A stretch of DNA of 56,566 bases, from assembly GCA_013115145.1 (NCBI GenBank), contig JAAPAO010000185.1:1-56566 (forward strand), given 5' to 3'. The position numbers and the translations under genes are program-made. Origin of the DNA: Perkinsus chesapeaki ATCC PRA-425. Its lineage: Eukaryota > Protista > Perkinsozoa. Shown one piece after another: positions 3,583 to 45,003 of this stretch (positions are counted from its first letter, which is position 1; each line of letters opens with the position of its first letter). The notes under the pieces are model-generated. The model was not told the origin of the DNA. It worked only from the letters and a program-made list of their open reading frames with translations, and did no database searches.

Positions 3583-6198
3583 CATTTCAGGTTCTGCTTA
3601 CGCTACTCAGCGATCTACACACCTTCCTGAGAAACGAAAGTGAAGTACTCGTGCCTAAGGGGCAAGCCTCGGTATGTTCGAGCCGTCGAAAGAATATAAT
3701 TCCAATTTCGTGTTGCTTCAAGAGCACGCATATTTTTTTTAGATCCTGGAAAATTGCACTCTAGTAGAACGGGATCTGAGCGATCTTCTGAGCAAGGAAG
3801 ACACGAGGAAAATTAGCCACTAAAGTCATGCCGCGAATTTGAGTTCTAGTGAGCAAGTCTCGAGTTGGAGCCCGGTTAGTTTTGGTTAGCTAACGGTTGC
3901 TGATACGTGTCATTTGGCATTCACGCTACCTAAAGAGCGTGCTCGGCAGGGAGACTGTGACTACTCAACGAGACCACTCTTTAGTCTGAAGTTCTACGAA
4001 GAGCCCGTCCCAGTATAGGAATAATAAACATATGAACCTCAACAGTGGCTGTATTCTCAGGCAGAGTTATATAAGAAGTTATTTTCTGTCCCTTGAAAAA
4101 ACTCACTCGGGTTTCCGAAACTAATCAACCAAGAACTACTTCTTGCCAACCCATGAACCATACCATCTCCGAAATGACATTTCACATGTACGTAATACGT
4201 ACATATGGCTCAGGGTGGTTGGCGGGTGGTGGTAAAAATTGATTCCGCCTAAAATATGCCCTAAAACCTCGAAGGAAGTTATAAAATTTATCCCCCGGGG
4301 AGTCCGGGCAGCTGTCACGGTAGGACGCGCGCTAAGCGCGCGAAGAGAAAATCACCCCATACCTGGGAATGGCAGCCGACGACGCAGAGTACACCTATAC
4401 CTGTACAAGTATTCCTACTATATGTATCCGTATTTATAAATCTGTATACCGCCTAGTGACCCACTAGTAGTGGAATGGGCCCCGTTCCACAGAGTAAGAT
4501 TCGCATTTAACTGTTCAACTTGCACACAATTCGTCGCTTTGAAGGCGATGTCTCATCGTTTGGGAGTCTCAGACGAACAAGTTGCCGTTCGTACGGTGAT
4601 ACCGTAACGGAGTTATATTGAGTCTCTGTTACAGATCTGAATTGTTAGTTCTAGTTCAGTCGCTGGTTGTGTCTCGCACTCGATTCGCGATGGATTAAAA
4701 TTAGTTTCATTCATTCATTGTGTGACCCTACCGTGAATACAATACGCATAAGCCGGCTGCTGTCCACGCTGTAGATTCCACATCGAGAGAAAATAATTTA
4801 AAAAGAATTGAGCATTTTGATGATCCTGGGCATCAAAAAATAGCTGACGAGCCAAACAGTATAGTCTCGTCAAAGTCGTTGAGTTATCTGACGGCTCTTC
4901 AGTGAGGGGCTCGACCCCAAAAACATCTCACCGCGTCTTACTCAAATCGTGAAAGGTAAACGCAGCGAGATGTTTTCAACGACTGTTTCCTGGCCTTGCT
5001 CTTCCTCAGAAGGGTTGCAGCCTGCAACCCTTCTGCAGGTGTCCCTGCAACTTGCAGGGATGTATCTGTACCCCTTATTCTTGACTGCTGTTGCTGGTGG
5101 TTCACTCATGGGGATGAACTCAAAGCAAAGGCTTCTATTCGATCTTCAGCTATGGGGGAGAATTAGCTACGTAATAATCGATTAACCGCGCAGGGTCGAG
5201 TGGAGGCGGTAACACTTTCCCCTCCACAGAAAGTGATTAATCATAGTGATGGTGTTGATAAAAAGTAAAGTAGTAATGAGTACTATAAATTTATCAACGA
5301 GTACTATAAACTTATGAATGATAATGGGGGCAGGTATAAGGAGGATGAGGCTCTTCCTATTGTTGGGAATCTCCAAGTCGACTTATAACGACTCAGAGGA
5401 GCCATGGGGCCCCCATGGTGGGAACCCTGTAGCCCGTGCATCATACGTGATGCATACCTCTCAGAGTCATATTCACTATTATAGTGCGCTTCTGATTCTC
5501 GTACTGGAGCCAGGCTTCGCCTGAGGCGGTTCGCCTCGCAACAAAGATGGCGCTGGTCGACTTCTTGCCACTGGTTCGCCACTGCGCACGCTTTGAACTT
5601 CTGCTGAAACCCACTGCTCGAAGTCTGGTGTAGTCGTTGAGAGATCAAATGGCTCATCTATGTCAGCGTTCATTTGATAATCAATCAACCGTAGTTGGTC
5701 TAGCTGAGGTTCCTAGGGCTACCCAACGCGAGAGGCATATGTCAAAATTGGGCGTAATCTCTTTGGAGTCAAAGGCCAAATGAGATTCAACTCCACTTAG
5801 CCACATGTTCATCATCACGTCTCATGTGACACGTGATATCACTGATAATCCTGCCATCTCTCTCGACCGTGTTCACAACACTCTTGAGTAAATCAGATAC
5901 TGACTGTCTAGTAACGCAACTCCCAAGTAGCATGGGAGATCAACAAAAAGTCCCTTATTCTGGTTTTTGGTTCAAATCCGATCCGAGAGTTCCCGCGGGA
6001 ACTGCATAGCTGTCAATCGAAGGCGCCCAAATGACAGCTAGTGATATGAAGGTATTCATATCACTAGCTAATGATAGGTATGGAGTAATGAAATACGGAG
6101 CCTCCGTCACGGAGGTACTATCAATGACAAATAGGACACAGCTCAACAGCTTTATGGAGTCATGATCAAAAGCATTCGTCTGACTTTATTTATCATAT

Positions 6199-26551: not shown

Positions 26552-29500
26552 ATGTCATTGGATGCCTCAGCGATACCTACCCCTCTGATGCATGGGATTG
26601 CGGGAGCTCTAGCCAACACGCTGTCGATCGTCCTGCTATATCCTTTGGATCAAATACGTAATAGGGCTCATTAGGGGTATACAGGGTCACAAAAAATATG
26701 GAAAATTTCGGGAAAATATGTAAAAAATATTCTTTGCCGGAAATGTTAAGAAATTATTATTAACATTCGGAGCTAGATATGCACATTTTAGAAATGATGT
26801 TATTTGGTCCGGGATGCTAGAAACAGGATTACTCCAATTTTGAAGTAAATGTGATTCGGGAAAGTGCCCAGAATTTGGTAATTCGGCGAGTCTAAAGAGC
26901 TTCCTTCGTCTAGGTACCATTCAACAGGCGGCATCATCTCGAAACTCCGGTGTTTCCCTCTCTCATTTGCTATCCCTGAGGAATATCCCTTCACTCTACC
27001 AGGGGATTGGAGCGTCTGTGGAGGCATTGCTGGTCAGCTATTTTGTGTTCTTCTTTGCATTTGCGTAAGTAAATATCTCAAGCGACGTCTTTACATTGCG
27101 ACATGAATCCTCTACTCTGTCATCGAGTTATTGGATTATTCATAGTTTTGTAAAAAGTTAAATAATAAATATCGATTTCTTACTATTTATTGCAGCAATC
27201 TGATGAGCTTCCCTGACTCGGAGACTTGGAAAAAAGACGTCCTTTCGACTACTAGCGGTTATGTTCAGATACTTTAGACGTAGCAAGTTGCAGTTTTCTG
27301 GAAGGAGCAGACCGACACCATTCGACAATCTTGTATCATCTATGGCGGCCGGAATTCTGAATGTAAAATATCGATATAGCAGCTCGCATTATCTCACCGG
27401 ATACACACGGGTCTAGATTCTTGCTAGTAGATGGGATACGCTAACCACTGGTTATATAATTGTATGGTCAAGTATGAGTGAGCGCGTTGGTCAATCTGAT
27501 GTAGCAGTTCCGCAGGAGGAGAATCTCTATCTGTCTAGTTATGTTATATTGTATCTACTGTCGAGCGGTAATAATATCGCTGAGTGAGAGCCTCAGCGTA
27601 AGTCGAAGGACAGGTGTGAGTTGAGCTTCTGATTCTTACTGGCCTACAACTAGAAATCAATAAACTAACAGGCTGAGCCAAATCTTAGCCGCATCTAATG
27701 TTAAATGGTTATTTAGTAGTTCAGTCTTGGCAATTGTCTATAAGGGTTAGGCAGTGTGTCGACTGGCAATTATTGTACTAATACGCAGCGGTAAGAGTAC
27801 TATATAATGAATGTGTAGTTTGTCAAGAAGCGAATCATTCACAAAGATTTTATAAGGAAACAAAATGATAATCAGTGGGATTTCTATTGAATATCATTAT
27901 CTTGTAGTAGTTGCACTTCTCCAATTTCAGGTGCTCATGACGAGCCCTCTATGGGTGTATTCTACCACCAAACGTCTGGGAAGCACATCTCGCGGGGAGT
28001 CGTTTCTTGGTTTTGTAATGGGTAGGGAGAAGTGGTCTGATTTATGGAAAGGTAGTCGAAGGACGGCGAGAATACCAGTTAGATTGCAGCTGCTTTGCAT
28101 AATGGAGAAGCTTGAAATAGATTATTTTTCCGCAAATATTTTCCCTAAAATTTCCCAGTAGATTAATTTTATCATTATATATCGTATCATATGACTCTAC
28201 AGATTTATTTTCATTGAAAATGTCCACACTGTTCAAATATCAAGCTATTCGGAAATCGACGGGCTACACCTTCACTTTGATTCGGGTATGAAGTTGGTGC
28301 TTATTCTAAATTCCAATGCACCAGTTGGCTCTCGTGTCTATCCTTTCGGTTTCAATTTCATATCGGAGGTTCGAATCCGATCTCTGGTTTCCGAGTTCTC
28401 TCTTCGCCGAAGAGAGCGTTCGGTAAGACTCAGTTTCTCTTCAGGAACTGCGGCCTCATTGTGGCTAGTCGGCAACCCGGTGGTGCACTTCGTCGTATAC
28501 GAAAGTGGAAGATTGGCATTATTGAGCCGAACTCAGCCAGCAAGGCAGAGGGTAGTAGGGAATCGGCTCACCGGATCGCGAATGAATCATGAACCGTTCG
28601 GGGACAGAGATTCATCTGACATCGCGGAAATCGTCCTTCGAGGGTCAAGAATTGTTGGTAGCGTGGACCGGAAGAACTGTTTAACGATTTACTAATAGTG
28701 CTATCATTCATATAACTGTTCAACGATTTATTAATGGTGCTATCTTTCATACAACGATTTTGAAGATTTACGAAATGTAACGATCTAAGTGTCAGATAGA
28801 AATACAGTTAGTAGCTGTGTTTCTATCGCTTTTACCAGTAAGTAGTATTAATTATGCGTATTAGCAACAGTCTAGAGGAATGCTTCTCAATTTGGGCAAC
28901 AGCCTATGTGTTTGTGGATCCTAAAATCCTGGCCATTTCTGGTAGTAATATCTGATGTAGTGGTATTGTCTACACTGGAAATCACTTCTGTCTCCTCGAT
29001 TGTGTTCCACTTTTTGATCGATGCGAAAATCTAAAGCTAACGATAAATTTCACTCCTCTATATAAGTATTTTGATTGGAATGGTCCGCCGTTGTGAAACG
29101 TACACTGCAACGGTTCGTAGTCGGTTATTGTACGATGAAACGTCCTCTACTGTCTTCCTCGAAAACTGGCATTGGTTGTATTATAAAACCGTCACGGTTT
29201 GTCCTTTCGACTTTCAATTCATTATATTCTCATAAGTGAAATTCGCACTTTATCGAAATGTATTGCTAAGGATCTTAGGGTTTCTCGGCGATAGATGACG
29301 GAGTATCTGCAGAAGGCGTGAGAGTGCTGACTGATAGGCAAGCGATGGTGCTGGGAGGGCTCGCCAAGTTCACCGCTACAATGGCAACTTATCCTCTACA
29401 GGTGAGTTCCAGCGACAGCTAAAAAGTTGTAATTTGCTTAATGGTTTGTTGTCTCCTGAATGATGAGTAGTCAGTAAAAGGACTAGTTTTTAATCTCTCG

Positions 29501-32500: not shown

Positions 32501-34000
32501 GAGGCTCGGATATGGGAAGATCTCTGGCGTATTCCTGCCTGTGAGTTTGAACATCTTAGTGGGTCCTTGATGAGTTAGAGCATGATTGCAATGTAGAGAT
32601 CATGCCGGTTTGAGCAACCATAAAGTTCATAGGAGATAACCGAGTGTTGATTAGCAATACTCGTTCACATCATGGTATGAGATAGAGGACATAACTCGGG
32701 AACAGCGCTCCATTTAGCCTCGATATATCATCATCCCGCACTCCATGACTCATGGACCATGAAGAGTGAGAAACCGCCAGTAGACATTTCATGAAAGGCT
32801 GTGCCACAGCGGCTGTGGAGCGCAAGAGTACCAGCATATAGCTGAGTTCGACTCATTAGTATTTGGCAAATTAGGGCGCCTAAGCGAAGGGACAGCAGGT
32901 ATGACACAATTGGTGCCACAAGCACCTGCAGGCTGCCTGCACTTACTAGATTGTTTAAGATCAGTCTGAATTGTATGCGTCTTGAAGTGCCGCATTGCGG
33001 GTGGCTCGTAATAAGCTGCAAATGGTGAGAAACATAAAATGCTCCCTAGAGGAATGTGCTTGATGTTTCTTTTTGCTCTTGGAATTCCCGTCCGCATCAG
33101 GAACTCATTGTGGTCCTGAGAAGCACTCTCAAATGTGGCCAAACGCTTCCTAGTCCAGTTCGTTATACGGTGTTAGTAAATCCTTTGAGAAAGTTTGATG
33201 AATGTAGATACGATTCGTAGCTTCCGACAACAACTGTGTGATAACGCGTATCATTTCAGCTCGTCCAGACAATACTGAGAGCTGAGGGAAAGAGCAACCA
33301 ATCAATGACAACTCTGGGATGCCTGTTGATGGTGTATCGAAGAAGTGGCGTCATTGGATGTTATTCGGGACTGCAGGCCAAATTAACACAAACTGTAAGC
33401 GCTTTAAATGCGGGCAATTTCGCACTGAAATTGCGAGAAATTTTGTTTCCCTCAATACTTAACGATTTTTTTTCTGTGTTTGGCTGATTTTTCCTGGATA
33501 TTTTAGCAAGCATTTTACTCAGTTTAACTAAAAAGCAGATCACATTGTAGTATTCCACACTTGCTTCAGCTTCATGCTAAAATTATGGAAAGTTAGGCAT
33601 CTCATTTGTTGCTTTTTCGGAAGAAAATTTCCCGGGAAATTTTCCCCGTTTTATTCGGAATTTTTTTGCATTGCAAATTCCAGGATGTATGTGATGACGA
33701 ATTGCTATCGAAGTTTCAAGACGTCTCTTTAGGGAAGTAACGGGTTTGTGAACGTTTGCTTTGTAGCGCACGTGTGTGCTTAAAAATCGAAGACATCGTC
33801 CCTCTGAAAAATTTTATGCGAAAATTTTTTACCTGAAGTGTTGTCCCTGCCGAGCTGGCCATTGAACTCCCTTCGCCCTTCAGGTTCTAAATGCGATGCT
33901 AATGTCTGTATTATACGAAAGGATTTTGAAGATAGTTCAACGCAATTCTTATACCGTGTCATCGGCTATTAAGAGGTACCGGGCAAAGCTGCCGGAATAA
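26552..34000 (+). CDS. SLC25 carrier of the peroxisomal PMP34/SLC25A17-like type, 8 exons, ~317 aa
   Basis: Exons 26552-26657, 26914-27064, 27269-27362, 27931-28051, 28445-28551, 29279-29401, 33260-33394 and 33884-34000 are phase-consistent. Three carrier repeats: HGIAGALA...YPLDQIR, AAGILNVLMTSPLWV, and GGLAKFTATMATYPLQLVQTILR...YSGLQAKLTQTVLNAMLMSVLYE. Confidence 0.85.
30220..31385 (+). pseudogene. Nested gene inside carrier intron 6: signal-peptide-like start and low-complexity C-terminus, with a frameshift near 30508
   Basis: Overlapping ORFs 29971-30537 and 30495-31385 switch frame at LVWFSK / GKPKCMRFL. The candidate 36-nt intron 30508-30543 would give an immediate stop, so this is a frameshift or an assembly error. 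Confidence 0.6.
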
Positions 34001-34003
34001 AAG

Positions 34004-34035
34004 GCGCAGGTTCAATTCCTGGCTGGGGCATTTTT
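34004..34035 (+). other. tRNA-like 3' fragment (T-arm, acceptor 3' strand, A, T5) just after the carrier stop codon
   Basis: GCAGG-TTCAATT-CCTGG-CTGGGGC-A-TTTTT. No matching 5' half lies upstream. Confidence 0.6.
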
Positions 34036-36063
34036 CTGTAATTATCATCTGTACTGTAACGATATATTCACGTTGTATTACGAAAATCGAGTTTCTATTT
34101 CTTTGTAGAGTTTCGTTGGGCTACTTGATGATTCGGAAGCGATTATACCCCACAGGTGGGTTCATATGGGATTTAACGATGTAAAGTTTTTACCACGGAT
34201 TTGAAATATCTCATTACTTTACGATGAATGAAATGCTAAGTGATTCAGCCCAAGTCTAAAAGGGACTTTAAATTCCCTTTCAGCTCTTTGGTTTTTTTCA
34301 CGAAAATTCCATGTTTGAATCTGAAGTATTTCCATCCCCGAGCGAAACCATTCCTACGGTGATGCTGAATGGCTCCTTGGACTTTGATAAACGACTCAAG
34401 TGAATGTATTAGTTCATTGGTGAATGATAAAATAGTACTATAATAATTATAGGTAATTAGGGATTCTCGTTATGTTATAAATATATTAATAACATTATAA
34501 TTGATATCATTGTACACTGCGCATCAAATTCTGATCAGCTCTTTTAAGAGTTGAGAACAACTAAGGTGTGGTTATTAGCTCATTTGACGCACCCTACATA
34601 TAGTAACTTCGTATATAATAGAGATTCCACCTTCTCCTTCAATATCATTCTCCATCTGCTTAAGGCATATTCCGGTGCTGATGAAATGTTGCAGTGACGC
34701 GCAATATCTTGGCGCGCGGTCGTGAACGATGATTCTGCGAGGCCTCTAGAGCTAGGGGCATTATAATCTGATTTTTGATAGATATCTGATCCACCATCAT
34801 TATAGTATTCAAAGCAAGGTGTGCATTAGTTAAGAGCAGCGTATGGTTCCTGGAATATATAGTCCTTCTGGGACGAACAGCGAGCACACAAGCTGATTAC
34901 ACCACGTTCCATTGGGCGATTGCTCAGTAATGCGGTAAACATCAAATCGATTTTACCCCATTCGCGCATTTGGCATCTGCGACGCTTTTGATTTAATCAA
35001 CCGCTCTACAGGAGCTGCCCCAGAACGGTTATATATTATAGAAGATCCTCCCCCGCCGAGGAATCTACATTGCTGCCGATTTCTGCATCCCCGCCGATTA
35101 CCCGAAAATAATGCGAACTCCTTGGACCGATCATTATTATGAGTAGCAGCACAGATGGTAACATTTGCAATCGGTATTTCACCGGAGTTCGGCAGGCTAC
35201 GACAACTTTCTAAAACCGACACAGCGATGCACTGCTGCTGGCTAGCCTGCTCGAAGGGGACAGACTGCTGCACAAGATAAAGTTGTGTATAACATTTCAT
35301 AAACTTCATTATCAAACTAATGATCGAACGAGTCCGATTTACTATGGACTAATTTATCGTAATAAATGTAACACTAATATATTAGATTGGAAGTTGTCGC
35401 ATAATTTCGCCTGATGTCTGGTATCGGAATATCTGACCGCAGCCTTCCGAGACTTGGCATTTTTGGTGGAGTACTTGAGTGTAGAAATTCATCGAGATAA
35501 TTTAAAGACGTCTACGGCGTGCTTTCTGTGAAGTTACTTACCATTTAGGATTTAACAGTATATTATTCGCTTATGTCCAATAATTATTCCACATCAGCAC
35601 AGCCGTATAGCTCCAAACAAGATCAAGAGCAAGGTGATATTGGGGAAGGCAAGGGGAGGGGGGGGGGCATAGAGGAGCATCATATGAGATGATGGTATGA
35701 TTGATGGACGATACCGTATTAGACATAGCAGCAGGAAGGTGTGCCTGTTAGTCTGTATTTTCTGTTCTCTCTTAAGAACGCTTTTCCTTCTCCTTCAAAT
35801 GCTTCTCCGGAAGGCTGGATGAATCGCTTCGTGTAATCAGTTCGCCTGCTCGGTTGGGCTGTGTAAAATGGGCCACACCATTTCGATTCTATTGAGATCG
35901 AAATAGTTGACACTAAACTGACGAAAAATCAGCATTAACCTCGTTATATTGGAAAAACAATCGAAAAAACTCAGCAGGTCATATAATTTTGTAATGTTCT
36001 GCAATGCCCCACACAACTTGTACTTTTCCTAGATAAGAATACTGTCCTAGACTTCATGCTCAG

Positions 36064-40701: not shown

Positions 40702-43700
40702 ATGAGTGACACTCCAAAACTAAACCGATCGGCGATGACGTCGTTGCAATCGGATATCCATTCGATGCAAAATAATATGAAAACTGACGATTTCCATTCC
40801 TTGGCAAACTCCTACAATGCGACCCTGAGGAGTTGGGAGAAAGCCGCGGCGATGAGCTCGGCGATGAGCGGTGCTGAGGTGGTCGATGTTCAAAAGATGG
40901 TAAGGTGCGCATGCGTGCAAATGTGGTAGTGTGGTTGATGTCAGAACGCCCCGGACTTCCTGGTGAAGGCGGTAGTTGACTTGGAGGATTATATTCAGGA
41001 GAAGTTCTCGAGTAGTTGGGAAATCTTTATAGTGCATAAATGAGCGTATCTTTAGATAAGTCTAAGATGTCGAAGATCAAAGCACAAGCGTTGAACAAGC
41101 TTAGGGCACAGGTAAGATACAAAATAGGTCAGCTTGGTGACGACTGTGGCTAAATCGATCAGGTCCGGAAGGGAAATGCGCAGACTTTCTCTGAGGAGCA
41201 GCTCGAGCATTGTCGAGAGCACCCGGAAGATTACGCTGACCTGGAGCCCGAGGTTGACGAGGACTCTGACGACGACGATCAGGATGAAGTTGAGAGTGAG
41301 GAGTCCAGTAGCGAATCGGAGAGTGATAGTGACGACGAATCTTCCGAGAGCGAGTCGGATTCGGAGTCGGAGTCGGAGAGCAGCTCGAGCGAGAGCGAGG
41401 ATGAAAGCCCGAAGGTTCGCGGTGCCGGGATCGAACCCGGGTGGATCGGTTTGTGTATTAGGCCAAAGCGAAGCCGAAGCGTCGGGCAGTCGTTGATGAT
41501 GTGGATTCTGAGGGATCGCTGACTTCCTCAGATGAGGAGAGCGATAGTGACGAGGACGAGGTAATAAAACTCCAGAGGCCGGGATCGAACTTGCGTGGTT
41601 CAGTCGTCATCGGACGAATCGTCCTACAGCAGTAGCTCTTCATCATCGTCGAGCAGCTCCTCGGAGTCGGACTTCTCGACGAGTGAGAGCGAGTCTGAGA
41701 GTGACGCGGAGAGCGCATGGAGCATGTCGGCCGACGATGAGAGTGAAGATGACGAGCTGGACGAGCAGGCGAAGAGGAGAAAGAGAGCTTTGAAATGGCT
41801 CAAGGACAGCGATGAGAGTGACTCTGAAGATGAGAGGAGGCAGGCTAACGAGGTAATATGGCCTAGCGGTAGAGCGTTCGGTTTGTAACCCGTATGTCGC
41901 TGGTTCGATCCTTAGTTGTTACGTTTAGATCCGTGCTCGCCGCTTGCAAGCTCGTGGGGCCAAGGACGAGGCGGCAGCCAAGCGTCAGCAGGCCATGGAC
42001 AGCGATGCTGATGAGGAGGACACCGACGCCGAATTCAACGTCATAGACCGCGAGGAAGCGCTGGCTGAGACTTTGAAAACTCAATACGGTATCCATGATG
42101 AGATGGAGGAGGAGGATGTGCTGAGCAAGACTAAGGAGATCTTGCAGCAACGGGGTCGAAGAGGAGTTGACAGGCAACTTCAACATAAAAAGATGCTTGC
42201 TCTCCTGGAGATATCCGAGAAGAACGATTTCGATCTGAGCACTCGAGCGACCCTTCTGGGAGCTATCCTATCTCATTACGTGGACCAGCGAGCTGGCGTG
42301 TTCAACAGTCTCCCTAGGAAGGCATGGTTGGAGTGCTTTGGTTATCTTGGCAAGTTGATATCTCTCGTGGCTGCCGATGCTAACACTATCATTCTCACTG
42401 GTGGTATGGAGAAGAGTGAGGATGAGACTGTAAAGAGGCAACAGCGATCTGCGACCAACTCGGCGTTGGCCGGCTACATCGAACAGCTGGACGAAGACCT
42501 ATATAAGAGCCTTCAAAGTGCAGCAGAGTAGGCTTGGCCGGGGATCGAACCAGGGACCTTTCGATTGTTGTTAATTTTAGTTTGTCCTCCGCGCAACATT
42601 CCGCTGGTTCGTCGACTACTACTGGTGCTATCGATAATGCCGAGCAGTACACACAGCGACTGGTGGACTCCTACCGACTAGCTGCCGTGGAGTTCGTGGC
42701 ATTGTGTCAGTTCAAGAGTAATGGAGGGAGGGCATCTGTGAAGGGTTCGTACTGGATCATTTTTAAAACGGAGAAGTGGTACTTGTGAGAAATAAGGTTC
42801 ATAAAAATTTGCCAACGTACCAGGCTGGCGGCCTTGAAGCGTTTTCTTTGAAGACTTCTCTAAGGCTTCGTCACAGCGACATTTTGGCAACTAATCACTC
42901 CGCCTCCAATAGACCTAACTCGAACTAGGTTGTTGACGATGACGTTTCATTTCGGTTCCGTGCTCGTTTGTAGCTTCGCCGCGGATTAGTTCGAGGTTTT
43001 TTGTGATGTCGCGGCCGGGGTCTTTCGCATGTTGGTTGTTTCAGTTGATACCAGCGTTGAGGAAGGTGAAGCCAAGGACTCCGTGGTCTCCCGCGTCGCT
43101 TTGAAGTTGATAGATCATCTCTACTATCGTCCAGAGAACCTCAACAAGTTGGTCATTCGCAAGATTTCCGAGAACCTCAAGAACGGCGACGATCTGATGT
43201 CATGCAACCTCGCGAGCGCCTTGGTGGAGACCGCCAGTGTCGAGTGGGAGCGTCTCTCTCAGCTGGAGGAAGGCAGCTCCGTGGCTCTCGTCGGCAGTCT
43301 GGCCGCCTGCATCTACAACTTCAGCGGTCCTATGGCGACTAGCATGAAGGTCGTCGCTTTGTTACGTCAAATTTTCCACTACGCAAATAACGATCGACTG
43401 AAGGAAGCCAGGAGGCTGATAACGGTCTCGAACGTCCACGAGAGGGTGCCTCCCTCCCTTACCGGCGCGGGTGCCGATGTCAACACGCAAGTGTTATACA
43501 ACAGGGCGCTGGCAGCGATCGGAATGGCTCACTTCAGAGCTGGAAATGTTGCCCAGGCACATAAGTAATATATGGGTAATAATGTAGGGGGTGGGAATCG
43601 AACCTGTGTAGGTATCTATACGAGCTTTGCGGACAGAATCGATGCCGTGAACTTCTTGCTCAGGGATACAGTAGAGTGTCTACCATGCGCGGAGAGGTAG

Positions 43701-45003
43701 CCATTTCGTGGCGCAGTGACGGAATTTCGTGCCATTCAGGAGAAGACACCCGAGCAAGAGAAGGCTGAAAGACGTCGTCGTCTGCCCTATCATATGCATA
43801 TGAATCTCGAGCTCATCGAGACGGCCCATATGATTTGCGGTGTCCTTCTTGAAGTGACTCAGATGGCTTATCACCGTGCAACTGGTAAGGTGGTCTTGGG
43901 TTCTATCCGCGGCTGGGGTATTTTTATTGTATATTTTATACAGTGCTGGAGAATATCGTCTATACGTCGAATCGATGAGGAATTTCCTCAGGGAATGCTT
44001 GCAGGAATTCCTATTATGGTTTTGATAAGCGGTACTTCCCAACTCTATTTTTCAGGTGCCAACAGTCCCTTGGTGAATCGCGTTGTCCGTCGGTCTCTCG
44101 AGCTCATGGATCGTCAGACCTTCCTGGGCCCTCCTGAGTCAGGTCGTGACTCTGTACTTTTCGCTGGCAAGGCGGCCCTCTCCGCCGACGTTGACCGCGC
44201 TGTGGCGTTGGTGTCGTCATTGAAGATTTGGGAGCAGCTACCAGCACATGTTCTTACTTCCATTCAAGACGGCATGAGGAGGACCTGCCTTCAAGTTGCC
44301 CTGTACAGAAGTATGCTAACCCATACCTCAGTGAACTCCCTCCAGCTCTCGGAACATTATAAGGTGGATCACAGCGAAGTTAACGGTAGGAATTAATATG
44401 ACAACTTGCAGTGGTTCTAGCTTTGTGAGATCTAGGGTCCGTTGTGGAACTTTTCGTCGGGTCATTGGATTGCAAATGTATCGGTGAACTCCAATTTGAC
44501 GCTGGTCGGCATTGGTCTTTTTTTGTTAGCTATGATTCGTCAACTGATCTTAAGAGGAGAGTATCCAGCTCAGTTCGTGCCGGAGGGTGAGATCGGCGAT
44601 GCCACCGAAGACAAGATGCTTTTCACCAAGTAAGAGACTTAGCCTTTCTGGAGGATTCCCTAAATCTTGTCTTTCCAGCTTCACCCGGGCAACTCGATTC
44701 CAGCAGTTGTCTCGTCAGCTTGTGGACCGCTCAATCATGACGACGGATAGCAACGACAAGCTGGTGATGGATCCAACGACTGGTCGTTACGACTACCGAG
44801 GAAGCGGCCTTCCGAGTGATCAACCCAAACCGAAGATTGCTCGAGCGCCGATGACAAGCGAGGAGGCGGCCAGGAGAGGATGGGGCGCTGCACGGCGGCA
44901 AGCGAAGGGAACGGTGATCCCGAACGCTTCGGCTGTGGGCGGTCTGAAGCCCGCTGTTGGTGGATTGAGGACAGGCAAGTACGTACCGCCAGGACGACGT
45001 TAA
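40702..45003 (+). CDS. EIF3C: Eukaryotic translation initiation factor 3 subunit C (14 exons); the true start may lie upstream
   Basis: Introns: 40900-40944, 41012-41055, 41112-41162, 41415-41461, 41561-41603, 41853-41928, 42528-42580, 42718-43044, 43565-43611, 43697-43739, 43885-44055, 44386-44529, 44630-44678. Motifs: DLEDYI, KAQALNKLRAQVRK, LIDHLYYR, TQVLYNRALAAIGMAHFRAG, RELLAQG, EKAERRRRLPYHMHMNLELIE and LGPPES. Confidence 0.92.
41853..41928 (+). pseudogene. Degenerate tRNA-like cloverleaf (anticodon position TGT, Thr-like) forming eIF3c intron 6
   Basis: A-box TGGCCTAGCGG, then GGTAGAGCG, loop TTTGTAA, variable region ATGTC and B-box GGTTCGATCC, all at canonical spacing. GTAATA pairs with TGTTAC. 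Several stem mismatches argue against a functional tRNA. Confidence 0.7.

What the first reader, a model, noticed from the sequence alone, without database searches (positions are those of the whole stretch)
41853..41928. A 76-nt intron that is itself a tRNA cloverleaf, with the splice donor as acceptor stem
Seen: the reading frame requires intron 41853-41928 (ANE|IRARR). Taking the last exon G as tRNA position 1 puts T8, the A-box TGGCCTAGCGG, G26, loop TTTGTAA, a 5-nt variable region and GGTTCGATCC at canonical positions. The donor GTAATA pairs with TGTTAC, which lies 6 nt before the end of the intron (GTTTAG). The D, anticodon and T stems each have mismatches. Inference: a whole tRNA(Thr-like) gene was converted into an intron. 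The fold would bring the splice sites together or hide the donor, and could be a substrate for RNase P/Z, giving structure-regulated splicing or a mascRNA-like product.
Basis: partly seen in the sequence, partly recalled or inferred. Interest (0 to 1): 0.8.

Follow-up and report, generated by a model that had tools for sequence, protein, structure and literature searches.

The report
Worn-out tRNA gene serving as intron
A 76-letter intron in the eIF3c gene of a Perkinsus shellfish parasite is a decayed tRNA gene: it no longer folds like a tRNA, but its two docking sites for the tRNA transcription machinery are unchanged in three species, so it is probably still used at the DNA level.

Summary
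Window 41853-41928 is a real GT-AG intron of the eIF3c gene. The reading frame requires it, it contains an in-frame stop, and it lies at the same site in P. marinus and P. olseni. It aligns end to end with the Rfam tRNA model at 21.4 bits, below the gathering score of 29, and it is the only tRNA match in the window.

The cloverleaf is worth about 0 kcal/mol against an MFE of -14.5. The MFE is no better than shuffles. The stems decay differently in each species, with no covariation. The donor-TGTTAC helix disappears once exon flanks are included.

What is conserved is the internal Pol III promoter. [quoted passage not shown] The boxes are 32 bp apart. Fourfold sites between these species are saturated (34-46% identity).

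At least six of the gene's 13 introns in the window carry tRNA pieces, in both orientations. This points to a constraint on DNA, most plausibly TFIIIC binding, which is inferred and not shown.

Earlier notes of this scan describe the same class of intron on other DNA of this genome. I found no published description. Thr identity is not robust.

The parts
40702..45003 (+). Host gene: eIF3c (translation initiation factor 3 subunit C) coding region, 14 exons and 13 introns
   Evidence: Pfam eIF-3c_N on two exons. Collinear with P. olseni P0096 and P. marinus P0094. The curated model translates to 1053 aa with no internal stop.
41853..41928 (+). The finding: a 76-nt phase-0 GT-AG intron (intron 6) that is a decayed whole tRNA gene in sense orientation
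   Evidence: The frame requires it. Rfam tRNA scores 21.4 bits over model positions 2-69 of 71. An orthologous 83-nt intron lies at the same site in P. marinus and P. olseni.
41853..41858 (+). 5' splice site GTAATA, aligned to tRNA acceptor positions 2-7
   Evidence: alignment. GTAAT is invariant in all orthologues. GTAATA is also the donor of introns 5 and 9.
41859..41869 (+). A box TGGCCTAGCGG (tRNA positions 8-18)
   Evidence: It matches the A-box consensus TNGNNNANNNG quoted in PMC11724288. The four consensus positions are invariant in five orthologous sequences.
41882..41888 (+). Relic of the anticodon loop, TTTGTAA. It reads TGT here, but the triplet differs in each species.
   Evidence: The flanking stem has 2 mismatches in the window and is fully paired only in P. 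marinus.
41902..41911 (+). B box GGTTCGATCC (tRNA positions 52-61), 32 bp after the A box
   Evidence: Exact match. GGTTC-A--C is invariant in five orthologous sequences, and changes occur only at positions 57, 59 and 60.
41917..41922 (+). TGTTAC, relic of the 3' acceptor strand, complementary to the donor GTAATA
   Evidence: alignment. The complementarity is not maintained in the orthologues: 60% of cells are paired. It is not beyond chance when position is free.
41923..41928 (+). Tail GTTTAG: a short T-run where a Pol III terminator would lie, followed by the 3' splice site AG
   Evidence: The T-run is T3 here, T5 in P. marinus, and T4 or T3 in the two P. olseni sequences.
41415..41461 (-). 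Intron 4 (47 nt): tRNA T arm plus 3' acceptor strand on the minus strand. It is present only in the window species.
   Evidence: The P. olseni and P. marinus introns at this site are unrelated in sequence.
41561..41603 (-). Intron 5 (43 nt): minus-strand T arm followed by a T4 run (AAAA on the + strand, just after GTAAT). Window species only.
42528..42580 (-). Intron 7 (53 nt): minus-strand variable region plus T arm plus acceptor strand, conserved in all three species
   Evidence: Interspecies identity is 71-86%, against 34-46% at fourfold sites.
43565..43611 (-). Intron 9 (47 nt): minus-strand T arm, conserved in three species
   Evidence: Interspecies identity is 76-79%.
43697..43739 (+). 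Intron 10 (43 nt): a conserved 22-mer containing an A-box-like TGGCGCAGTGACGG. Its tRNA origin is my reading of the sequence and was not scored with a model.
   Evidence: alignment. Interspecies identity is 82-83%.
43885..44055 (+). Intron 11 (171 nt): plus-strand T arm or B box near the 5' end, followed by a T-run
   Evidence: B-box conservation is pooled.

Best explanation
Window 41853-41928 is a genuine spliceosomal intron of the eIF3c gene of a Perkinsus species. Almost all of the intron is an ancient, decayed tRNA gene in sense orientation. The tRNA's 5' acceptor strand now serves as the 5' splice site. The short T-run after the tRNA body, plus AG, serves as the 3' splice site. The element was already in place in the common ancestor of this species, P. 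marinus and P. olseni.

Since then the stems, the anticodon and the acceptor pairing have drifted at about the neutral rate, so the RNA no longer folds as a tRNA. The two internal Pol III promoter elements have been kept unchanged at a functional spacing. These are the A box and the B box, which in tRNA genes are the DNA sites bound by the tauA and tauB modules of TFIIIC.

The most likely working part is therefore the DNA and not the intron RNA. I propose it is a TFIIIC-binding site, possibly still Pol III-competent, lodged inside a Pol II gene. That would resemble an ETC site or a tRNA-gene insulator.

It is one member of a set of tRNA-derived introns. At least six of this gene's 13 introns in the window carry tRNA pieces, in either orientation.

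Shown: intron status, tRNA ancestry, loss of the fold, and selective conservation of the boxes. Inferred: TFIIIC or Pol III binding and any downstream role.
For: Intron status: frame shift, in-frame stop and orthologue proteins.

tRNA ancestry:
- Full-length Rfam tRNA alignment at 21.4 bits; single-family E is about 0.0015 for the window.
- The cloverleaf register pairs 69% of cells, against 27-53% when slid.
- The orthologous intron at the same site in P. marinus (2 sequences) and P. olseni (2 haplotypes) has the same layout and aligns without gaps over the 70 columns of the tRNA body.

Neutral background: fourfold-site identity between species is 0.34-0.46, and introns 1, 3 and 13, which have no tRNA piece, show 0.26-0.49.

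Box conservation:
- A-box plus B-box columns are 74-83% identical between species, against 39-46% for the rest of the body (p 0.002-0.01).
- All 11 consensus positions are invariant in 5 sequences, against 13 of 53 other columns (p = 3e-6). The spacing is 32 bp. The functional range of 31-93 bp and the consensus come from PMC11724288.
- B boxes of introns 6, 7, 9 and 11 pooled are about 80% identical, against 35-52% for the rest of those introns (p 2e-4 to 3e-9).

DNA-level argument: the same conserved core occurs in both orientations relative to the host transcript.

Precedent: TFIIIC binds B-box sites without Pol III and acts as an insulator (PMC12409998).
Against: - The tRNA score is below Rfam's gathering threshold. 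The orthologous introns get no tRNA hit at all at E<=10.
- ARAGORN is uninformative.
- There are only three species, which gives two deep lineages plus a split.
- The consensus promoter positions are also the D-loop/T-loop tertiary positions of tRNA. Their conservation alone therefore cannot separate a DNA-level from an RNA-level constraint.
- The window copy has only T3 after the body, so productive Pol III termination is doubtful here.
The presence of TFIIIC subunits in Perkinsus was not checked.
- The T arms of introns 4 and 5 are absent from the other two species, so not every such element is conserved.
Confidence: 0.6

Rival explanations
1. Inert relic. The intron is a dead tRNA gene or fragment with no present function. 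The boxes look conserved because of small sample size, local mutation-rate differences, or occasional gene conversion from the many genuine tRNA genes of Perkinsus.
For: The stems decay freely. The orthologues fall below any tRNA-model threshold. The T arms of introns 4 and 5 are lineage-specific, which shows turnover. The two P. olseni haplotypes differ inside the B-box variable positions. P. marinus has more than 500 copies of just five tRNA gene types, which would give ample donors for conversion (PMC3706591).
Against: 11 of 11 consensus positions are invariant, against 13 of 53 other columns, while fourfold sites are saturated. The same pattern holds for B boxes of three other introns. Conversion from tRNA genes would also refresh the stems, and these are decayed.
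Confidence: 0.22
2. The intron RNA folds as a tRNA-like cloverleaf that juxtaposes or masks the splice sites, or is cut out by RNase P/Z to give a mascRNA-like small RNA.
For: The donor GTAATA and TGTTAC are complementary and pair with p about 0.8 in the isolated window intron. The D-loop and T-loop tertiary positions (G18, G19, T54, T55, C56, A58) are conserved.
Against: The cloverleaf is worth about 0 kcal/mol against an MFE of -14.5, and the MFE is not below shuffles. D and T stems have pairing probability 0, the donor helix is lost in exon context, and nothing forms in P. marinus. No covariation is seen and the acceptor helix is 60% paired. Such donor complements are common by chance. Sister elements in antisense orientation keep the same core, which an RNA fold cannot explain.
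Confidence: 0.05
3. Chance resemblance. This is an ordinary short intron that happens to score 21 bits against the tRNA model.
For: The score is below the gathering threshold. At whole-genome scale a hit of this strength is expected about once by chance for the single family (my extrapolation). ARAGORN at a relaxed threshold finds as many hits in shuffles.
Against: [quoted passage not shown] Five other introns of the same gene carry T-arm or B-box motifs: 10 motif hits against 3.2 expected, with none of 100 shuffles reaching 10.
Confidence: 0.05
4. Active introner or SINE. The intron is a recent copy of a mobile tRNA-derived element that spreads and creates introns.
For: It has a tRNA-derived head with an internal promoter, as in SINEs. 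Many introns carry tRNA pieces. None of the gene's 13 intron positions is shared with Vitrella or Hammondia, so the lineage has gained or moved introns.
Against: There is no second copy in the window even with 3 mismatches in an 18-mer. There is no LINE-type tail, poly-A, terminal inverted repeat or target-site duplication. The insertion predates the split of three species whose neutral sites are saturated.
Confidence: 0.08

Closest known systems
tRNA pseudogenes and tRNA genes nested in introns of protein-coding genes (many eukaryotes)
   Same: A tRNA-derived sequence with A and B boxes lies inside an intron of a Pol II gene.
   Different: Here the tRNA relic is the intron. It runs from the splice donor to about 6 nt before the acceptor, with no other intron sequence. 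It is one of several such introns in one gene. Only its promoter boxes are conserved across species.
ETC (extra TFIIIC) sites and tRNA-gene insulators (yeasts, human, C. elegans; PMC12409998, PMC11724288)
   Same: B-box-type DNA motifs are conserved away from functional tRNA genes. These sites are thought to act through TFIIIC binding to DNA, independent of orientation relative to neighbouring genes.
   Different: Classical ETC sites are mostly intergenic and have an extended B box without an A box. Here a full A box plus B box at tRNA spacing sits in a tiny spliceosomal intron. TFIIIC occupancy is untested.
Introner elements and transposon-derived introns (Micromonas, fungi, dinoflagellates; review PMC11282704)
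   Same: An inserted genetic element supplies an entire intron, including its splice sites. The lineage appears to have gained many introns.
   Different: There are no near-identical multicopy families, terminal repeats or target-site duplications. The source is tRNA genes of apparently different kinds, and the copies are ancient and orthologous across species. That review mentions no tRNA-derived introns.
tRNA-derived SINEs
   Same: A tRNA-related sequence with an internal Pol III promoter is found inside genes.
   Different: There is no tRNA-unrelated body or LINE-derived or A-rich tail. It is only tRNA-sized and single-copy at an orthologous site.
mascRNA / MALAT1-type tRNA-like structures
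   Same: A tRNA-like sequence is embedded in a Pol II transcript.
   Different: Those fold into stable cloverleaves that RNase P and Z process. This one has no stable cloverleaf in any of the three species.

Membership tests
Spliceosomal (U2-type GT-AG) intron | GT...AG boundaries whose removal restores the reading frame | tested here: met
   Frame 3 shifts to frame 1. There is an in-frame TAA at 41886. The spliced product is collinear with orthologues.
Spliceosomal (U2-type GT-AG) intron | Intron at the same position in related species | tested here: met
   An 83-nt intron follows the same AACGAG codons in P. marinus (L002, L004) and P. olseni (L001, L003).
Spliceosomal (U2-type GT-AG) intron | Removal observed in transcripts | not testable with these tools
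Functional tRNA gene (Rfam RF00005) | Covariance-model score at or above the gathering threshold (29 bits) | tested here: not met
   The window copy scores 21.4 bits. The orthologues give no hit at E<=10. ARAGORN finds none at default settings.
Functional tRNA gene (Rfam RF00005) | Four intact cloverleaf stems maintained by compensatory change | tested here: not met
   In the window, 17 of 20 pairs form, 6 of them G-U. Across species 69% of cells are paired, with no covariation above shuffles. The cloverleaf energy is about 0 kcal/mol.
Functional tRNA gene (Rfam RF00005) | Internal A box and B box at tRNA spacing | tested here: met
   TNGNNNANNNG and GGTTCNANNC are present in all five sequences, 32 bp apart. 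The consensus and spacing range come from PMC11724288.
Functional tRNA gene (Rfam RF00005) | Stable anticodon identity | tested here: not met
   TGT in the window, ATT in P. marinus, GTT in P. olseni.
TFIIIC-bound site (ETC-like or tDNA insulator) | B-box consensus conserved beyond the neutral expectation | tested here: met
   against fourfold-site identity of 0.34-0.46.
TFIIIC-bound site (ETC-like or tDNA insulator) | TFIIIC occupancy, with or without TFIIIB and Pol III | not testable with these tools
   This needs ChIP or CUT&Tag in Perkinsus. The presence of TFIIIC subunit genes in Perkinsus was not checked.
Introner or transposon-derived intron | Multiple near-identical copies at non-orthologous sites | tested here: inconclusive
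   There is no second copy in the 56-kb window and none in the scan index (where a blank is uninformative). The whole genome could not be searched.
Introner or transposon-derived intron | Terminal inverted repeats or target-site duplication | tested here: not met
   None is visible at the junctions by inspection. After this much divergence they could have been erased.
tRNA-derived SINE | tRNA head plus unrelated body plus LINE-type or A-rich tail | tested here: not met
   The element is 70 nt of tRNA body plus 6-13 nt of T-run and AG.
mascRNA-like processed tRNA mimic | Stable acceptor and T-arm fold recognisable by RNase P/Z | tested here: not met
   T stem and D stem have pairing probability 0. 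The acceptor helix is lost in transcript context.

The most novel reading that the evidence does not exclude
Perkinsus may use decayed tRNA genes as a working class of introns. In this reading, tRNA genes or their fragments have been a major raw material for intron gain in this lineage. Their A and B boxes remain live TFIIIC (possibly Pol III) docking sites inside Pol II genes. This intron, with a complete type-2 promoter kept in three species, would be the clearest case. TFIIIC bound within tiny introns could organise chromatin, or slow Pol II to help define introns of 45-80 nt. That would be an undescribed link between the Pol III machinery and spliceosomal intron biology.
Probability: 0.3. 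Interest if true: 0.85.

Novelty: new variant of a known kind. Interest (0 to 1): 0.62.

Why it matters
Where new spliceosomal introns come from is an old open question. The documented sources are mainly transposon-like introners. This intron is, from donor to acceptor, a former tRNA gene. It sits among sibling introns made of tRNA pieces, in a lineage where none of the gene's 13 intron positions is shared with two other alveolates (a chromerid and an apicomplexan).

Only the Pol III promoter boxes survived about saturating neutral divergence. That suggests TFIIIC-type sites embedded in Pol II genes are under selection in a protist. Perkinsus belongs to a lineage close to dinoflagellates, whose transcriptional control is described in the literature as limited.

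P. marinus can be cultured and transfected (from my own knowledge, not checked here), so ChIP, small-RNA sequencing and minigene tests should be feasible.

For this particular finding, the attractive idea of a tRNA-shaped intron regulating its own splicing can be set aside.

Tried and rejected
- **ARAGORN.** Default settings find nothing in the window or the loci. At a 90% threshold it calls 41851-41925 'tRNA-???' with a 4-nt anticodon, but shuffled windows give 0.85 such calls, so I dropped it as evidence.
- **Rfam on the orthologous introns.** No tRNA hit at E<=10, either in whole loci or in 241-nt slices. The window copy is therefore the best-preserved one, and tRNA-likeness in the orthologues rests on alignment to the window copy.
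- **Closest genomic tRNA and isotype.** No genuine tRNA gene lies in the window or in about 40 kb of fetched Perkinsus DNA. No eukaryotic tRNA set is available offline. The anticodon differs in all three species, so the isotype stays unresolved. From memory, the anticodon arm resembles eukaryotic tRNA-Asn(GUU) at least as much as Thr. That is a lead and was not tested.
- **Donor-acceptor pairing as a selected feature.** Rejected.
- **B box as a branch-point or other pre-mRNA signal.** Rejected by inspection. The motif lies 7-39 nt from the acceptor, or near the donor in intron 11, and occurs on either strand.
- **Antiquity of the intron.** No intron of Vitrella or Hammondia eIF3c coincides with it or with any of the other 12. 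The alignment around this junction is in a low-complexity region, so this is weak evidence.
- **A first automatic gene model** merged introns and was discarded in favour of manual curation.
- **Look-up by sequence in the scan index.** Blank.
- **Literature searches** for tRNA-derived spliceosomal introns in Perkinsus or elsewhere found nothing relevant.
Full report
**What is at the coordinates.** Window 41853-41928 reads GTAATA ... GTTTAG. The upstream coding frame (frame 3, ending ...GCT AAC GAG at 41852) runs into TAA at 41886 if read through. The downstream frame (frame 1) starts at 41929 with ATC CGT GCT CGC CGC. Only removal of exactly these 76 nt joins the two frames. The alternative AG at 41914-41915 leads into a frame with a stop.

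The flanking exons match Pfam eIF-3c_N. The annotated eIF3c proteins of P. olseni (P0096) and P. marinus (P0094) align across the junction without a gap, as ...QANE|V/IRARR.... I curated a 13-intron model of the gene (CDS 40702-45003). It translates into 1053 residues with no internal stop and is collinear with the 1058-aa P. olseni protein. A first automatic model was wrong and was discarded.

**Which organism.** The best protein relatives are P. marinus ATCC 50983 and P. olseni. In this gene P. olseni and P. marinus are closer to each other (84% DNA identity) than either is to the window (73-82%). The window therefore comes from a third Perkinsus lineage. Earlier notes of this scan call it P. 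chesapeaki. I could not verify the species name.

**How tRNA-like is it?** Rfam's tRNA model aligns positions 2-69 of 71 to 41853-41922 at 21.4 bits, against a gathering score of 29.
- In that alignment the acceptor helix is GTAATA/TGTTAC: 6 bp, one of them G-U.
- The D stem has one mismatch and the anticodon stem has two.
- The T stem pairs 5/5 only with an 8-nt loop and three G-U pairs.

At window scale it is the only tRNA hit. E is 6.4 over 4227 families, which is about 0.0015 for the tRNA family alone. Nothing reaches gathering thresholds. ARAGORN is silent at default settings. At a 90% threshold it reports this intron, but shuffled windows yield 0.85 such reports, so that test does not discriminate. 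On score alone the case would be suggestive only. The comparative data below settle the question.

**Orthologous introns.** I fetched the eIF3c loci of P. olseni (L001; L003 = L006), P. marinus (L002) and a P. marinus-like Logan assembly (L004). All of them carry an 83-nt intron after the same AACGAG codons. Over the 70 columns of the tRNA body the five sequences align without a single gap.

The tRNA model does not reach E<=10 on any of these orthologues, so the window copy is the best preserved. In the cloverleaf register 69% of pair cells are standard pairs, against 27-53% when the 3' partners are slid by 1-3 columns. That fits tRNA ancestry. Neither the pairing nor the covariation exceeds column shuffles (62/500 and 46/500), and the acceptor helix is paired in only 60% of cells. 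The anticodon triplet is TGT in the window, ATT in P. marinus and GTT in P. olseni, so 'Thr-like' cannot be upheld.

**Does the RNA fold?** It does not fold as a tRNA.
- The cloverleaf evaluates at -0.5 kcal/mol, or +2.5 with the mismatched pairs opened. The MFE is -14.5, and that is no lower than shuffles (z = +0.6).
- In the partition function the D and T stems have probability 0.
- The donor-TGTTAC helix has p about 0.8 in the isolated intron, but 0 once 60 or 150 nt of exon are added on each side. Nothing of the cloverleaf forms in the P. marinus intron.
- A perfect Watson-Crick or G-U partner for the donor hexamer within the last 25 nt is found in 4 of the gene's 13 introns and in 8.9% of shuffles of this intron.

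The idea of a fold that joins or masks the splice sites, or of an RNase P/Z substrate, therefore has no support.

**What is conserved.** Neutral divergence between the three lineages is about saturated. Identity at fourfold degenerate sites of this gene is 0.34-0.46 between species, and introns 1, 3 and 13, which have no tRNA piece, show 0.26-0.49.

Within intron 6, the A-box (tRNA positions 8-19) and B-box (52-62) columns are 74-83% identical between species, while the rest of the tRNA body is 39-46% (Fisher p 0.002-0.01 per species pair).

I then used only the published consensus positions: A box TNGNNNANNNG (PMC11724288) and B box GGTTCNANNC. All 11 are invariant in all five sequences, against 13 of 53 other body columns (p = 3e-6). 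The substitutions in the B box fall only at the variable positions 57, 59 and 60. This test conditions on the window copy, so it is not inflated by the way the intron was picked.

The two boxes are 32 bp apart, inside the 31-93 bp range reported for yeast tRNA genes. After the body comes a T-run: T3 in the window, T5 in P. marinus, and T4 or T3 in the two P. olseni sequences.

**Context in the gene and the window.** GGTTCGATCC with at most one mismatch occurs 10 times in the window against 3.2 expected, and none of 100 shuffles reached 10. Six of these hits lie in eIF3c introns.
- Introns 4, 5, 7 and 9 carry a T arm with the adjoining 3' acceptor strand on the minus strand.
- Intron 11 carries one on the plus strand.
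- Intron 10 has a conserved 22-mer with an A-box-like core.
- In P. olseni and P. marinus, intron 8 also holds a minus-strand T arm that has decayed in the window.
- Introns 7, 9 and 10 are 71-86% identical between species.
- Pooled over introns 6, 7, 9 and 11, the B box is about 80% identical, against 35-52% for the rest of those introns (p 2e-4 to 3e-9).
- The T arms of introns 4 and 5 exist only in the window species. The introns at those sites in the other two species are unrelated in sequence, so there is turnover as well as conservation.
- Further B-box sites with tRNA-like flanks lie at 5969, 28368 and 34009.

The same core is conserved in both orientations relative to the host transcript, and the stems are gone. 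The constraint is therefore more easily placed on the DNA than on the pre-mRNA.

**Age of the intron.** None of the 13 intron positions coincides with an intron of Vitrella (about 25 introns) or Hammondia eIF3c. In Hammondia the homologous point lies inside one 324-residue exon. This fits gain of these introns in the Perkinsus lineage. The alignment around intron 6 is low-complexity, so for this particular junction the evidence is weak.

**Literature.** Full-text searches found no description of tRNA-derived spliceosomal introns in Perkinsus or elsewhere. A 2024 review of transposon-derived introns mentions neither tRNA-derived introns nor Perkinsus. Kojima and Jurka (PMC3706591) report more than 500 copies of five tRNA gene types in P. 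marinus and Dada DNA transposons that insert specifically into tRNA genes. That is useful background on the abundance and mobility of tRNA-gene DNA in this genus, but it is not the phenomenon seen here. TFIIIC recognition of A and B boxes, ETC sites and insulator roles are established in other eukaryotes (PMC11724288, PMC12409998).

**Earlier notes of this scan.** After I had already seen the multi-intron T-arm pattern, the index showed that several other windows of this genome had been reported as carrying introns made of tRNA 3' tails with a conserved B box. A first-reader note covers five eIF3c introns of this window. Another unfollowed note describes a 'whole tRNA core' intron elsewhere. 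My tests on this gene agree with the B-box claim. They add that in a full-length, sense-oriented relic the A box and the tRNA-type spacing are conserved too.

**Interpretation.** The best-supported reading is that a whole tRNA gene came to occupy, or to create, this intron before the three species split. Its 5' acceptor strand serves as the donor, and its trailing T-run plus AG serves as the acceptor region. Everything needed for a tRNA fold has since decayed at the neutral rate. The complete type-2 Pol III promoter has been retained by selection.

Binding of TFIIIC, with or without transcription, is the obvious candidate for what selection sees. That step is an inference. Two caveats apply. 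The consensus promoter positions double as the D-loop/T-loop tertiary positions of tRNA. The window copy also lacks a T4 terminator.

I rate them at about 0.22, 0.05, 0.05 and 0.08.

Noticed in passing
window 41415-41461 and 41561-41603: Introns 4 and 5 carry near-perfect minus-strand tRNA T arms. Intron 5 also has the terminator T-run, seen as AAAA after GTAAT. These exist only in the window species. The P. olseni and P. marinus introns at exactly the same sites are unrelated in sequence, and in P. marinus much longer. Either there was lineage-specific capture into an existing intron site, or complete decay elsewhere.
   Followed up: partly
window 43697-43739 (intron 10): A 22-mer, ATTTCGTGGCGCAGTGACGGAA, is identical in all three species inside a 43-nt intron. 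It looks like a tRNA 5' acceptor strand plus an A box with a 2-nt insertion. It was not scored with a model.
   Followed up: partly
window 42718-43044 (intron 8); L001, L003 and L002, orthologous intron: This intron is 327 nt in the window. In P. olseni it is short and carries a minus-strand T arm (TCGAACCCGGGACCTTTCGG) near its 3' end. The P. marinus intron carries the same arm. The window keeps only a decayed trace (CCGGGGTCTTTCG).
   Followed up: partly
window 33970-34040: Plus-strand tRNA 3' two-thirds (anticodon-arm-like hairpin, GCAGGTTCAATTCCTGG, acceptor strand, T5) starting right after a GT that follows AAGAG. It is probably another tRNA-derived intron in a different gene. Gene context was not worked out.
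   Followed up: partly
window 5919-5993 and 28368-28377: Two more plus-strand B-box sites, GGTTCAAATCC and GGTTCGAATCC. ARAGORN at an 85% threshold calls the first 'tRNA-Gly(ccc)', but at that threshold shuffles give 4.8 hits per window.
   Followed up: no
window 40702-45003 compared with L007 (Vitrella) and L008 (Hammondia): None of the 13 eIF3c intron positions of this Perkinsus is shared with Vitrella (about 25 introns) or Hammondia (about 9). That indicates wholesale intron turnover in the lineage.
   Followed up: partly
L005 (P. marinus GG680462.1) compared with L002: The P. marinus ATCC 50983 assembly holds a second 1.5-kb contig that is 95-98% identical to part of the eIF3c locus. It is presumably an uncollapsed haplotype. 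L002 also has an N-run gap in the region of intron 3.
   Followed up: no
window 40900-44678: Nine of the gene's 13 introns are only 43-53 nt long. The donors vary (GTAAGG, GTAGTT, GTAATA, GTAGGC, and even GTTCGC in intron 4). In intron 4 the donor is the reverse complement of a tRNA 3' acceptor strand.
   Followed up: partly
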